A DNA stretch of 63,646 nt, counting the filler, from Reticulomyxa filosa (taxonomy: Eukaryota > Protista > Foraminifera): the NCBI GenBank assembly GCA_000512085.1. It is 20 parts of 20 records of this genome, joined end to end, with 100 filler letters (N's around TTAATTAATTAA, not from the genome) between each part and the next. Parts side by side here need not be neighbours in the genome. Positions count along the whole stretch, not along the records: positions 56,068 to 60,782 come from ASPP01027228.1; 19 more parts are not named here. One strand, 5' to 3'. The notes beneath the pieces are model-generated. The model was not told where the DNA came from, made no database searches, and saw only the letters and a list, made by a program, of their open reading frames with translations. The position numbers were made by a program, and so were the translations under genes. Of this stretch, positions 55,952 through 60,943 are shown piece after piece (position 1 is the first letter of the stretch; the number at the start of each line of letters is the position of its first letter).

Positions 55952-56069
55952 TCAAAACATTTTTTTGNNNNNNNNNNNNNNNNNNNNNNNNNNNNNNNNN
56001 NNNNNNNNNNNTTAATTAATTAANNNNNNNNNNNNNNNNNNNNNNNNNNNNNNNNNNNNNNNNNNNNTA

Positions 56070-56959
56070 TAATAGAGAAAATACTATCGACCTTTAAAGA
56101 TTCTTCAAAGACATCCTTCTTATGTGCGCAATGTAAAATTTTCTCCAAACGGTTCTAAGATTGTTTTATGTTCAGATGAGACAGTCAAAATATGGAGTAT
56201 TGAATCCGAAAAAGAAATTGGAATACTCAAAGGACATTCAGATATTGTAAATGATGCACAATTTTCACCAGATGGGGGTATGATTGTTTCATGTTCAGAT
56301 GACAAAACCATTATATTATGGAATGAATCATCATGTAAAAAACAACCGAATTAAGAGGACATAAGCAAGCTGTGACCAGTGTCCAATTCTCACCAGACGG
56401 AAAAACAATTTTATCTGGCTCACACGATCAAACAATTCGAATATGGGATTTATATTCCGGACAAAAAGTGGCAATTTTAGAACAATTCAATAACATAACA
56501 TATGCACAATTTTCACCTAATGGTCAACAAATTATGTCAATATCCAATAATGGACCAATTGGAATTTGGGATGTAACAAGACGTAAAATGATATATGAAT
56601 TTAATGATAATACTCAACATGAACGTAAAGCAAAATTTTCATCAAATGGTCATTTGGTTGTATCTTGTTCAAAGACAGAAGAAATATTCTTATGGGACGT
56701 GGCATTTGAAAGAAAAAGCAAGACATTGAAAGGACATTTTGATGCAGTGAATGATGTACAATTCTTTTCAGATAATCAAACTCTTGTATCATGCTCAATG
56801 GATAATACAATCCGACTATGGGATGCGGAATTAGAAGTAGAAATACAAAAATTCCAAGGATATTCCGATAACATAATTATGATAGATGTTTCATCAAACG
56901 ATAATACAATTGTATCAATTTCTGAAAATGGAGTCATTCAATTATGGAAGTCATTGTGA
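56070..56959 (+). CDS. WD40 repeat protein (one homopolymer frameshift near 56345)
   Basis: Repeats of GH...V...FSPDG..IVS.S.D.TIR.WD. Confidence 0.9.
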
Positions 56960-58156: not shown

Positions 58157-60704
58157 ATGCTTTCTTTGTGTTACACGTTATTAAGTTTGTGGCTGACCCA
58201 ATTTTGGTGTTAAGTGAGCAAACAAGCATTTTTTTTTGTGACAAAAAACAAAAAATAACATAAAACAGCGAGCAAAGCACAGTTGTCAGCATCAGAAAGT
58301 AACGCACTGGTAAGTTTCTATAATTCGACAAAAGGGTTATATTGGGATATGTCATTTGGAGGTACGTGCACACTTTATGGAGTAAGGTGTGCTTATTCAT
58401 GGAATGGAGCCACACTTAATGCCACTGTAATTGGATTGACCTTGCCGTTTGAAAACATAAGTGGGACAATATCTCCAGAAATTGGTGACTTAATTAATTT
58501 AGAGATTCTTTCTTTAACCGACAATAGGTTAAGTTTAAAAAAAAAAAAAGTGATTAAAACTTATATTAATTTTAATATTTACATGTATGCTCTTGGTTTT
58601 GTGATTCAATGTTCTAACAGATTCACCGGGACTATACCGTCAACAATTGAAAAGTTATCAAAATTAAAGAGTCTTGGTTTGTCTCAAAATCAGTTAAGTG
58701 ATGAAAAATGCAATTGTGTGAATTTTGGTTTGAAGTGATATTTTAATATATCGAACACATTTGTCTTGTTTCGTTGTTTAATACACACATACATATACAT
58801 ATACATGTACAAAGACTGAGCGGAACGATACCATCAATTATTGGGAATTTACGTGAATTAACTTATATTAATCTGTATTACAATCAGTTAAAGTATTAAA
58901 AACGAAACCTATCAAACATATTTGTCAGCTAATTTGTCGTGTTGAACACTCTGTCTTACTTTCATTTAATATATATAACAGACTCTCTGGGACTATACCG
59001 TCGACAATTGGAAATTTAAATAAATTATCTAATCTCGAGTTGGAATACAATAAGTTAAGTCAATAAAAAATAAAAGTGTCAATTTTTGTTAAAAGTGACG
59101 TTTACATTTTATATATATATAATGTAAGATTAACTGGAGTTATACCATCAAGTATTGGAAACTTATCTGAACTAACATCTCTTTATTTGTTTTACAATCA
59201 GCTAAGTAGTGCTCATTAAAATGTAATTACTTTTGATTTCAAGTGATATTTTTTTGTATGAAACGCATTATCTTTGTCTGTGATTTGGTGTATTGAAAAG
59301 ACTATCTGGGACGATCCCATCAACACTTGGAAATTTGAATAAATTGACAAAACTTAGTTTGTCCAGCAACCAGTGACGTAGTCAAAACAAAACTTGTTTC
59401 TATCTCGATACATTTTTGTCTTGTTTGTGTAACTTAAATTTATTACAGACTAAATGGGACTATACCGTCGATACTTGGAAATTTAACTCAACTACTGTCT
59501 CTCGCTTTGGATAACAATCAGTGAAGTAACAGCGCAAAAACACGTTCAAAAAAAAAAAAAAACGTAATTGCTTTTGATTTGGGGTGATTGATGCATTGTG
59601 TTGTGTTGTGTTGGTTGTGTGTTGAAAGGTTAACTGGAACCATACCGTTGGTGGTTGGGAAGTTAGTTCAACTGAATTATCTTACGTTGAATAACAACCA
59701 GTTAAGTGCAAATTGTATTTGCTTTTCATTCGAAATGGTTTCTATATCGAACATTATCTTGTTTGTTTGTTGTTTTTTTTTTTTATGTAAAAAGACTCAC
59801 TGGGACAGTCCCCTCGACAATTGTAAATTTAAAGAATTTAAACGTTCTTATGTTGTCTGGCAATCAGTTAAGTAATGTTTTTTACAAAAATTTATAATCT
59901 CTTTGATTTGACTTGCAGAAATTATTTTATTTTATTTTTTTTGTCGAACACATTTTTTTTTTTTGTGTATTACTTTTAAAAAAAAAAAAAAAAAAAGATT
60001 AACTGGGACGATATCACCAACAATTGAAAATTTAGTTCAATTGTCTCACCTCATTCTGAATAATAATCAGTTGAGTAACAAAACAAAGCGTATTAAAAAT
60101 TGCATTGTCTTTGATGTAAAAGTGATTACGTGTGTATGTATGTTTTTTTTTTTCCCAATAAACAAAAGACTCTCTGGGACCATACCCTCAACGATTGGCA
60201 ATTTGAATAAATTGACCTTCCTTCTATTGTCCTACAATCAGTTAAGTAATGCTTTGCAAGATTGTATATTACCTTTAATACGACCTTGTTTGTTTTTCAA
60301 CGTACAAAAGGCTAACTGGAACTATCCCGCCGACGATTGGAAATCTGAGTAACCTAACGACGATTTTTTTGTCACACAATAAGTTGAGTTGGCTATTTGT
60401 TGTTCACAAAAAAAAAAAAAAAAAAAAAGTGTATAATGAATAACAAATAACTAAATAAACAAAGATTAAGTGGTGAGTTGCCGCCATTGAAGAAGCTCAC
60501 GTTATTAAATTGCTTTTCTGTTGGCAACAATATGTTGAGTGGCACAATTCCATTCAATGAAACTAGCAATTTGGATAGCATGCGTATGTTGTCATTAGAA
60601 AACAATAACTTTCACGGGAAATTACTCGAATTGCCTGCAATGCATAGCTTATCGATATTGACGCTGCATTCCAATCAGTTTTCTGATAGCAATGTTGATC
60701 AATG
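58157..60704 (+). CDS. Signal peptide + LRRNT cap + plant-type 24-aa LRR receptor-like protein (3' end missing)
   Basis: Exons 58157-58208 (MLSLCYTLLSLWLTQFW) and 58269-58527. Eleven 72-nt exons start at 58621, 58815, 58982, 59129, 59301, 59449, 59629, 59795, 59998, 60169 and 60311. Last visible exon 60465-60704. Consensus LSGTIPSTIGNLxxLxxLxLxxNQ. Confidence 0.93.
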
Positions 60705-60943
60705 GTATTATATTACAAAATGTGTATACATATATATGTATATATATACATATATATACATATATATACATATATATATGTANNNNNNNNNNNNNNNNNN
60801 NNNNNNNNNNNNNNNNNNNNNNNNNNTTAATTAATTAANNNNNNNNNNNNNNNNNNNNNNNNNNNNNNNNNNNNNNNNNNNNAATATATATATAAAAAAA
60901 AAAAAAAAAAAGGGGTATTTTTTTTATTTTTTTGATTGAATAG

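What the first reader, a model, noticed from the sequence alone, without database searches (positions are those of the whole stretch)
58157..60704. LRR receptor built as an array of 72-nt, one-repeat-per-exon cassettes: candidate combinatorial recognition system
Seen: eleven consecutive exons, each exactly 72 nt (58621-692, 58815-886, 58982-59053, 59129-200, 59301-372, 59449-520, 59629-700, 59795-866, 59998-60069, 60169-240, 60311-382). Each encodes one 24-aa LRR and each is flanked by phase-2 introns at the same repeat position (N-Q/K|L-S/T-G). Any exon can therefore be skipped, duplicated or swapped without changing frame. A signal peptide and LRRNT cap precede the array. Known: one-LRR-per-exon architecture occurs in brown-algal ROCO and ciliate LRR genes, where exon shuffling has been proposed. 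Inference: this could be a diversifying surface or immune receptor in a foraminiferan-like protist, varied by alternative splicing or DNA-level exon shuffling.
Basis: partly seen in the sequence, partly recalled or inferred. Interest (0 to 1): 0.85.

Follow-up and report, generated by a model that had tools for sequence, protein, structure and literature searches.

The report
One-repeat-per-exon LRR gene, foraminiferan-like genome
This is the front part of a gene for a secreted or surface leucine-rich-repeat protein in which eleven repeats each sit on their own 72-base exon; that layout is already known from brown algae, plants and animals, and nothing here shows the exons being mixed to create diversity.

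Summary
At the stated coordinates there are eleven exons of exactly 72 nt. All have AG acceptors; ten have GT donors and one has a GC donor. [quoted passage not shown] Each encodes one 24-residue plant-type LRR. A signal-peptide-like exon and an N-cap exon precede the array, and an unsplit exon with about three irregular LRRs follows it. The piece then ends in a (TA)n repeat, so the 3' end (TM, kinase or other) is missing.

Intronless LRR proteins from metagenomes align exon by exon, in alternating frames, which supports the splice model. No RNA run was listed, so splicing is not directly shown.

The cassettes are old duplicates. They share 54-76% DNA identity, dS is about 1.3 and scaffold dN/dS is 0.08. 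Introns share no significant homology. No near-identical or re-ordered cassette occurs in the locus, and no paralogue could be retrieved.

The neighbouring WD40 gene is closest to Reticulomyxa filosa proteins, which fits a foraminiferan-like source.

The 72-nt, phase-2, one-LRR-per-exon layout is published for brown-algal ROCO genes. Analogous layouts exist in SERK-type plant receptor kinases, NLRs, gonadotropin receptors and Tetrahymena.

Verdict: a new member of a known kind. Combinatorial use is possible but untested.

The parts
58157..58208 (+). Exon 1: ATG and a 17-residue hydrophobic signal-peptide-like leader, ending in phase 1. The donor is GTTAAGT at 58209.
   Evidence: Read from the sequence. 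The ORF listing shows the ATG is the first in its frame. No signal-peptide predictor was available, so this is inferred.
58269..58527 (+). Exon 2: the end of the signal peptide (S-K-A before Q), an N-terminal cap with a helix and a C-x6-C pair around G-V, three N-x-S/T sequons, and the first LRR. It ends in phase 2.
   Evidence: Sequence matches to N-cap plus LRR1 of FLS2, ERL1, PEPR1, SERK2 and PRK6. A profile of relatives matches plant LRR-RK N-termini. The AlphaFold model has mean pLDDT 74.5. Foldseek top hits are all LRR ectodomain N-termini but weak. Pfam finds no family for the exon alone.
58621..58692 (+). LRR cassette exon 1 of 11 (72 nt, phase 2-2)
58815..58886 (+). LRR cassette exon 2 of 11 (72 nt, phase 2-2); donor GTTAAAG
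58982..59053 (+). LRR cassette exon 3 of 11 (72 nt, phase 2-2)
59129..59200 (+). LRR cassette exon 4 of 11 (72 nt, phase 2-2), followed by the only GC-AG intron (GCTAAGT at 59201)
59301..59372 (+). LRR cassette exon 5 of 11 (72 nt, phase 2-2)
59449..59520 (+). LRR cassette exon 6 of 11 (72 nt, phase 2-2)
59629..59700 (+). LRR cassette exon 7 of 11 (72 nt, phase 2-2)
59795..59866 (+). LRR cassette exon 8 of 11 (72 nt, phase 2-2)
59998..60069 (+). LRR cassette exon 9 of 11 (72 nt, phase 2-2). Its acceptor is directly preceded by an A19 run.
60169..60240 (+). LRR cassette exon 10 of 11 (72 nt, phase 2-2)
60311..60382 (+). LRR cassette exon 11 of 11 (72 nt, phase 2-2)
60465..60704 (+). Last visible exon: about three irregular LRRs (23, 25 and 23 residues) encoded without introns. 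The 3' border is uncertain, and the gene is cut off by the (TA)n repeat and the piece edge at 60725-60782.
   Evidence: Sequence reading. Pfam LRR_1 and LRR_4 match below threshold. Tandem repeat at 60725-60779.

Best explanation
This is the 5' part of an ordinary protein-coding gene from an AT-rich, foraminiferan-like genome. It encodes an extracellular plant-type LRR protein, either secreted or membrane-anchored: a signal peptide, an LRRNT-type cap and at least 15 LRRs of 24 residues.

Eleven of the repeats each lie on their own 72-nt exon. An ancestral unit of one LRR exon plus one short phase-2 intron was tandemly duplicated long ago. Since then the introns have drifted in length and sequence, while selection has kept every exon at exactly 24 codons and kept the structural residues (L, G-T-I-P, I-G-N-L, L-x-L, N).

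The residues that form the concave beta-sheet face (x-x-L-x-L-x-x) differ freely between repeats, as in any LRR ligand-binding surface.

The most likely mode of expression is constitutive splicing of all exons into one solenoid. The symmetric exons make gain or loss of repeats easy over evolutionary time, but nothing shows a splicing-level or somatic combinatorial mechanism.

Shown: the architecture, the LRR class, the cap, the age of the duplicates and the purifying selection. Inferred: secretion, constitutive splicing and ligand binding.
For: - Exon geometry and motifs.
- Homology to intronless LRR proteins is confined to the modelled exons, in alternating frames.
- Selection: scaffold sites have dN/dS 0.08 at dS about 1.3; beta-strand variable sites have dN/dS 0.86.
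- Divergence: exon DNA identity is 54-76%. No pair is near-identical, and adjacent exons are no more alike than distant ones.
- Introns: they align only over the splice signals and low-complexity runs. The shared intron motifs are not above shuffles.
- Intron retention gives a premature stop in 8 of 11 cases.
- N-cap: C-x6-C with G-V; PDB sequence and profile hits to FLS2, GSO1, PEPR1, TDR and SERK N-termini; 12 of 41 aligned relatives hit Pfam LRRNT_2; the language-model search returns LRR clusters at 0.95.
- Nine N-x-S/T sequons lie within the exon pieces.
- Source organism: the WD40 neighbour is closest to Reticulomyxa filosa proteins, and piece GC 0.30 compares with 0.32 for an R. filosa contig.
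Against: - No transcript evidence of any kind; no run was listed.
- The 3' end is missing, so 'receptor', 'secreted' and 'anchored' cannot be told apart.
- Neither Pfam LRR nor LRRNT_2 reaches threshold on any single exon. The joined model was not searched.
- The symmetric phase-2 cassettes and one weak GC donor are what an alternatively spliced array would also look like.
- Ectocarpus genes of the same layout do show alternative splicing (PMC11378527).
- No paralogue could be examined, so exchange between loci is not excluded.
Confidence: 0.68

Rival explanations
1. Cassette exons are alternatively spliced by exon skipping, as reported for Ectocarpus ROCO genes. One gene would then yield LRR solenoids of different length and surface, forming a splicing-level recognition repertoire.
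For: - All eleven exons are 72 nt and phase 2-2, so any skip keeps the frame and gives Q or K at the joint.
- One GC donor (59201) and three off-consensus donors (GTTAAAG, GTGACGT, GTGAAGT) could be weaker sites.
- Published precedent for alternative splicing in 72-bp phase-2 LRR exon arrays (PMC11378527) and in NLRP3 (PMC6642158).
Against: - No RNA data.
- Symmetric exons are a precondition for such splicing, not evidence of it. The same layout in SERK-type plant receptor genes is described as evolutionarily conserved (PMC7496461).
- Each cassette has kept its own distinct surface residues over a long time (dS about 1.3), as expected if all are used together.
Confidence: 0.17
2. The locus belongs to a large, fast-evolving family in which 72-nt LRR exons are exchanged between loci at the DNA level by ectopic recombination or exon shuffling, as in Ectocarpus ROCO and Tetrahymena LRR genes.
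For: - The layout is identical in exon size and phase to the brown-algal case (PMC11378527, PMC3341825).
- Concave-face positions are unconstrained between repeats (dN/dS 0.86).
- The source assembly is fragmented and repeat-rich (the piece ends in a microsatellite), so paralogues may simply be out of reach.
Against: - Within the locus no two cassettes exceed 76% DNA identity, and the introns are unalignable.
- There are no dead LRR copies inside the introns, unlike Ectocarpus.
- Protein searches with exon 2 and with the last exon found no close relative.
- A collection-wide pattern scan found only intronless LRR genes.
Confidence: 0.1
3. The array is a decaying or unexpressed gene relic, or a fragment of one.
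For: No transcript evidence. No annotated protein corresponds to it in the databases searched. The neighbouring WD40 gene carries a frameshift.
Against: All 14 modelled exons are open and all splice sites are intact. Exon length is perfectly conserved. Scaffold dN/dS is 0.08.
Confidence: 0.05

Closest known systems
Brown-algal ROCO and LRR-only genes with 'type I LRR exons' (Ectocarpus, Saccharina; PMC3341825, PMC11378527)
   Same: One LRR per exon. Exons are exactly 72 nt, described as phase 2 and arranged in tandem arrays. The LRR domain was modelled on plant PGIP. Frame-neutral exon gain and loss are possible.
   Different: - The published exon register starts at G-x-x-P and ends N-x-L-x. 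Here the exon starts at L-S-G-T-I-P and ends at N plus two bases, so the intron sits about two to three codons away. This comparison uses the printed consensus only.
- ROCO proteins are cytosolic LRR-ROC-COR GTPases. This gene starts with a signal-like peptide and an extracellular-type Cys-pair cap.
- Ectocarpus shows near-identical shuffled exons, dead LRR copies in introns and alternative transcripts. None of these was found or testable here.
Plant LRR-RLK subfamily II (SERK/NIK) gene structure (PMC7496461) and plant LRR-RK ectodomains in the PDB
   Same: - The same order of exons: signal peptide exon, N-cap exon with a Cys pair, then exons carrying 24-residue plant-type LRRs.
- The same LRR consensus (L-x-G-x-I-P-x-x-L-G-x-L).
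- Exon 2 aligns to the N-termini of FLS2, ERL1, PEPR1, SERK2 and BAK1.
   Different: SERKs have only five LRRs on four exons, and their TM and kinase exons are known. Here there are eleven single-LRR exons and an unknown 3' end. Sequence identity is low (PDB E-values 1e-8 to 1e-3 with the single sequence). The organism is not a plant.
Tetrahymena LRR genes with arrays of 90-bp exons (PMC6564038)
   Same: Tandem arrays of equal-length LRR exons with an extreme phase-2 intron bias. Interpreted as exon shuffling from a clonal origin.
   Different: Exon length is 90 bp (30-residue unit), not 72. That paper describes thousands of young, species-specific copies. Here a single locus with old, diverged cassettes is seen.
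Vertebrate NLR and glycoprotein-hormone-receptor LRR exons (PMC6642158; LH receptor as cited in PMC11378527)
   Same: Strict exon modularity of LRRs, in-phase introns (phase 2 in gonadotropin receptors), and exon skipping documented for NLRP3.
   Different: A different LRR class (28-29-residue RI-like, or typical-type), different exon sizes and unrelated domain context.
Intronless N-cap + plant-type-LRR module proteins of bacteria and uncultured microbes (hits; loci L003-L066)
   Same: The best sequence matches to exon 2 (35-50% identity) carry the same A-L-x-x-L-Y-N-x-T-x-G-x-x-W ... W-x-G-V cap followed by L-S-G-x-I-P LRRs. Their N-Q-L-S-G codons match the window's exon end plus donor.
   Different: They are single long ORFs of 600-4900 residues without introns. 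Many have multiple cap+LRR modules and sit in bacterial gene neighbourhoods. No cassette exons.

Membership tests
Plant-specific-type LRR (24-residue L-x-x-L-x-x-L-x-L-x-x-N-x-L-S/T-G-x-I-P-x-x-L-G-x) | 24-residue period with the conserved L, N, G, I-P and L-G positions | tested here: met
   Column profile of the 11 exons. Ungapped tblastn HSPs from intronless plant-type LRR proteins fall on every exon.
Plant-specific-type LRR (24-residue L-x-x-L-x-x-L-x-L-x-x-N-x-L-S/T-G-x-I-P-x-x-L-G-x) | Significant match to a curated LRR profile (Pfam LRR_1/LRR_4/LRR_8) | tested here: inconclusive
   Single exons are too short: 0-1 weak hits. The last exon gives LRR_1 17.7 bits and LRR_4 17.1 bits, both below cut-off. 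Exon 2 gives none. The joined spliced model was deliberately not searched.
LRRNT_2-type N-terminal cap (PF08263) | A helix followed by a Cys pair around W/Y-G-V, just before LRR1 | tested here: inconclusive
   - C-T-L-Y-G-V-R-C has the plant C-x6-C spacing (sequence).
- PDB hits to N-cap regions.
- 12 of 41 aligned relatives hit LRRNT_2, but the window's exon itself does not.
- The model has helix 7-19 but pLDDT below 50 at residues 29-42.
- Foldseek E-values are 0.018 or worse.
One-LRR-per-exon cassette arrays (brown-algal type I LRR exons) | Tandem exons of exactly 72 nt, one LRR each, all in the same phase | tested here: met
   literature PMC3341825, PMC11378527
One-LRR-per-exon cassette arrays (brown-algal type I LRR exons) | Signs of ongoing shuffling: near-identical exons, or non-coding LRR copies inside introns | tested here: not met
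   Maximum exon identity is 76%. An exon HMM finds nothing in the introns above shuffles.
One-LRR-per-exon cassette arrays (brown-algal type I LRR exons) | Alternative transcripts with different exon subsets | not testable with these tools
   No sequencing run was listed for this stretch.
ROCO (LRR-ROC-COR GTPase) | ROC-COR domains downstream of the LRRs | not testable with these tools
   The piece ends at 60782 inside or just after the LRR region. The signal-like peptide and extracellular-type cap argue against a cytosolic ROCO (inference).
LRR receptor kinase / receptor-like protein | Transmembrane helix, with or without a kinase, after the ectodomain | not testable with these tools
   The 3' end is absent.
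LRR receptor kinase / receptor-like protein | N-terminal signal peptide | tested here: inconclusive
   A hydrophobic 12-residue core and S-K-A at positions -3 to -1 are read from the sequence. No predictor was available.
Tetrahymena 90-bp-exon LRR genes | Exons of exactly 90 bp | tested here: not met
   Exons are 72 nt.

The most novel reading that the evidence does not exclude
Foraminifera (Rhizaria) may independently have evolved an extracellular, plant-type LRR receptor built from symmetric 72-nt cassettes. These would be combined by exon skipping or exchanged between loci. That would be a third lineage, after brown algae and ciliates, with a cassette-based LRR repertoire, and the first on a secreted or surface protein with an LRRNT cap.
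Probability: 0.15. Interest if true: 0.6.

Novelty: new member of a known kind. Interest (0 to 1): 0.3.

Why it matters
If only the architecture is real, as shown, it adds a rhizarian example to the known cases where LRR solenoids are encoded one repeat per symmetric exon. The intron sits at a slightly different place in the repeat than in brown algae, which suggests convergent origin. That is useful for annotation, because prokaryote-style and many eukaryote gene callers miss such genes; none of its exons is represented in the protein databases searched. It also bears on ideas about how repeat proteins grow. If the cassettes were shown to be combined, it would point to a diversifying recognition system in a free-living amoeboid protist that feeds on and lives among bacteria. 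No evidence for that exists yet.

Tried and rejected
1. RNA support: the look-up of sequencing runs listed no run, so read laying could not be used.
3. Paralogues or orthologues by protein search:
   - The exon 2 ORF and the last exon found nothing in the word-indexed search.
   - The exhaustive representative search gave 4900 hits. The best are intronless giant LRR proteins at 35-50% identity, some in bacterial contexts.
   - An exact look-up of the window's WD40 product found nothing. Two earlier look-ups failed on my own frame error.
4. Collection scan for the 'LRR exon + donor' pattern:
   - My first local test used a wrong spacer, corrected.
   - The metagenome scan gave 64 loci. Nearly all are intronless LRR ORFs that read N-Q/K-L-S-G straight through; a few are chance, non-LRR matches. 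None has the cassette architecture.
5. Idea that the introns are dead LRR exons (intronization of alternate repeats): an exon HMM against the introns gives no hit above shuffled introns. Rejected.
6. Idea of conserved functional intron motifs (T-T-T-G-A-T-T-T..A-A-G-T-G-A-T and T-C-G-A-A-C-A-C-A-T): the copies lie at comparable intron positions, but the counts are not above shuffles. Left as an unexplained minor point.
7. Positive selection on the concave face: dN/dS is 0.86 at saturated dS. This is not evidence of diversifying selection.
8. Rfam: no match.
9. Fold of exon 2: the Foldseek hits are coherent but weak.
All searches were exon by exon, by reference.
Full report
**Observation.**
- Every interval is exactly 72 nt and every one is preceded by AG.
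- Ten are followed by GT, mostly the heptamer GTTAAGT. One is followed by GC (59201, GCTAAGT).
- Each exon begins with the last base of a split codon and ends with the first two bases of the next, so all flanking introns are phase 2.
- The inner 23 codons are open in all eleven exons. They encode L-[S/T/N]-G-T-I-P-x-x-I-G-N-L-x-x-L-x-x-L-x-L-x-x-N, the 24-residue plant-type LRR.
- The split codon is always CA or AA plus A or G, so any exon-exon join would give Q or K.

**This is far beyond chance.**
- A pattern linking the G-T-I-P codons, a 49-nt spacer and the exon end plus donor hits 6 of 11 exons, with none in 100 shuffles.
- Identity between exons is highest at second codon positions and lowest at third (0.76 against 0.53).
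- Exon length is invariant while intron length ranges from 70 to 131 nt.

**Gene model around the array.**
- Exon 1 (58157-58208) starts at the first ATG of its frame. It encodes a short hydrophobic leader and ends in phase 1 at a GTTAAGT donor.
- Exon 2 (58269-58527) completes a signal-peptide-like sequence (S-K-A before Q). It then encodes an N-terminal cap (A-L-V-S-F-Y-N-S-T-K-G..W, then C-T-L-Y-G-V-R-C, the plant C-x6-C spacing) and the first LRR.
- After the eleven cassettes, an exon starting at 60465 carries about three irregular LRRs (23, 25 and 23 residues) without introns.
- The piece then runs into a (TA)n/TATACATATA repeat at 60725-60779 and ends. The 3' part of the gene is therefore missing, and its nature (TM, kinase, GPI or none) cannot be known.
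- I corrected my own off-by-one errors for exons 1 and 2.

**Independent support for the splice model.** No RNA run was listed for this stretch, so I used homology instead. Four intronless LRR ORFs from metagenome loci (L008, L032, L035, L039) were compared with the piece by ungapped tblastn.
- Significant HSPs fall on each of the eleven cassettes and on exons 2 and 14.
- Median HSP starts lie within a few nt of the modelled exon starts. Median ends lie about 7 nt past the exon ends.
- The frames of successive exons are 2,1,3,3,1,2,2,3,2,2,3, so only splicing can join them.
- The 7-nt overshoot has a simple cause. The donor heptamer G-TTA-AGT read in frame spells (Q)-L-S, the very residues that begin the next repeat.

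**What kind of protein.**
- Exon 2 alone matches the N-cap plus LRR1 of plant receptor ectodomains: FLS2 at 9e-9, then ERL1, PEPR1, PRK6 and SERK2.
- A profile of exon 2 with 40 database relatives (alignment A2) matches GSO1, FLS2, PEPR1, TDR, PSKR1 and the full BAK1/SERK N-termini.
- 12 of the 41 aligned sequences hit Pfam LRRNT_2, but the window's own exon does not reach any Pfam threshold.
- The AlphaFold model of exon 2 (mean pLDDT 74.5; low at residues 29-42) has an N-terminal helix followed by short strands. Its Foldseek neighbours are all LRR ectodomain N-termini, from Bacteroides LRR proteins and from PSKR, FLS2, TDR, ERL1 and SERK. E-values are only 0.02-1.
- The language-model atlas returns LRR clusters at 0.95.
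- Nine N-x-S/T sequons lie inside the exon pieces.

Taken together, this is an extracellular plant-type LRR ectodomain. Secretion is inferred, not tested.

**Age and history of the cassettes.**
- Pairwise DNA identity between exons is 54-76% (mean 65%). Amino-acid identity is 43-83%.
- Adjacent exons are no more alike than distant ones, and no higher-order period is visible in the matrix.
- A Nei-Gojobori style count gives dS about 1.3 with dN/dS 0.08 at scaffold positions. At the five concave-face positions (x-x-L-x-L-x-x) dN/dS is 0.86.
- Introns align only at the splice signals and in poly-A/T or TA runs.
- Two short motifs recur at comparable intron positions, but their counts are not above shuffles.
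- An HMM of the exons finds nothing in the introns above shuffled controls. The introns are therefore not dead LRR copies, unlike what is described for Ectocarpus.

The simplest history is ancient tandem duplication of an exon-plus-intron unit. It was followed by long divergence under purifying selection on the scaffold and on exon length. There is no sign of recent duplication, conversion or shuffling inside this locus.

**Source organism.** The upstream gene (56068-56959, + strand) is an intronless WD40-repeat gene.
- Its best database relatives are overwhelmingly Reticulomyxa filosa WD40 proteins, at 35-41% identity.
- An R. filosa contig (L002, ASPP01032852 of GCA_000512085.1) has GC 0.32 against 0.30 for the piece. 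It also has a short intron with a similar donor, GTTTAGTG.
- The window's own products are not in the protein collections.

**Search for relatives with the same architecture.**
- The exhaustive representative search with exon 2 gave 4900 hits. The best are intronless proteins of 600-4900 residues with many cap-plus-LRR modules, at 35-50% identity, and some sit in bacterial neighbourhoods.
- The word-indexed searches with the exon 2 ORF and with the last exon found nothing.
- A scan of metagenome contigs with the exon-plus-donor pattern returned 64 loci. Nearly all are uninterrupted LRR ORFs that read N-Q/K-L-S-G straight through; a few are chance, non-LRR matches.

So no paralogue or orthologue with cassette exons could be examined. 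Every search was made exon by exon, by reference.

**Comparison with what is known.**
- Brown-algal ROCO and LRR-only genes: each LRR on a 72-bp exon described as phase 2, with exon shuffling, positively selected concave-face sites and, in Ectocarpus, alternative transcripts (PMC3341825, PMC11378527). The printed exon register there (G-x-x-P ... N-x-L-x) differs from the register here (L-S-G-T-I-P ... N) by two to three codons. This suggests an independent origin, although I could compare only against the published consensus.
- Plant SERK/LRR-RLK II genes: the same exon order, with a signal peptide exon, an N-cap exon with a Cys pair, then exons carrying 24-residue LRRs. The structure is conserved across land plants (PMC7496461).
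- Tetrahymena: tens of thousands of 90-bp phase-2 LRR exons (PMC6564038).
- Human NLRs: one or two LRRs per exon, with functional exon skipping in NLRP3 (PMC6642158).
- Gonadotropin receptors: phase-2 LRR exons (cited in PMC11378527).
- I found no paper on such genes in foraminifera.

**Verdict.** The architecture is a known kind appearing in a new lineage and on an extracellular plant-type LRR protein. The combinatorial-receptor reading is permitted by the geometry, but no measurement available here supports it, and the in-locus evidence points to old, stably maintained cassettes. I rate it a new member of a known kind, of modest interest.

Noticed in passing
window 56068-56959 (+): An intronless WD40-repeat gene, cut at the piece's 5' edge and ending at the stop at 56957-56959. 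Its reading frame shifts between the ORF 56124-56354 and the ORF 56372-56959, next to an A6 run near 56340. This is either a real frameshift or a homopolymer assembly error. Its best relatives are Reticulomyxa filosa WD40 proteins at 35-41% identity.
   Followed up: partly
window 58209, 58528, 58693, 59054, 59701, 59867, 60241 and other donors: The donor heptamer GTTAAGT is used by the two non-LRR-junction introns as well, so it looks like the organism's general donor consensus. Read in frame after C-A it spells Q-L-S, the start of the next LRR. Intronless LRR genes elsewhere carry the same codons at this spot (64 metagenome loci). An LRR's N-Q-L-S codons would therefore be a ready-made donor site in this organism. 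That could explain why the intron sits there, but this is only an inference.
   Followed up: partly
window 59201-59300: The only GC-AG intron of the gene (donor GCTAAGT), following cassette exon 4.
   Followed up: no
window 59548-59562, 59978-59996, 60408-60428: Long poly-A runs (15-21 nt) lie inside introns. The A19 run abuts the acceptor of cassette exon 9. Acceptors in general read A-A-A-G or A-C-A-G with A-rich rather than pyrimidine-rich sequence just upstream, and T/G-rich tracts lie further upstream.
   Followed up: no
window 58724-58739, 59232-59247, 59573-59588; 58751-58760, 59747-59756, 59944-59953: Two short motifs recur at comparable positions in several introns: T-T-T-G-A/G-T-T-T..A-A-G-T-G-A-T about 30-50 nt after the donor, and T-C-G-A-A-C-A-C-A-T about 35-55 nt before the acceptor. 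Counts are not above shuffles. They could be relics of the ancestral unit or branch-site-like signals.
   Followed up: partly
window 60070-60168: This intron is 99 nt long and has no in-frame stop, so its retention would add 33 residues without breaking the frame. Eight of the other ten introns that follow a cassette exon would introduce a premature stop.
   Followed up: no
window 60725-60779 and 58781-58811: TA-rich microsatellites: TATACATATA x5 at the piece end and ATATAC x5 inside an intron. The first probably caused the assembly break that truncates the gene.
   Followed up: no
P0001-P0150; L001: Very large intronless proteins (up to 4892 residues) from metagenomes carry up to about 35 repeats of the same module, an LRRNT-like cap plus plant-type LRRs. 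Some also have fn3, Ig or FlgD_ig domains and bacterial neighbours (MerR, acylphosphatase). The cap-plus-LRR module is therefore widespread outside plants.
   Followed up: partly
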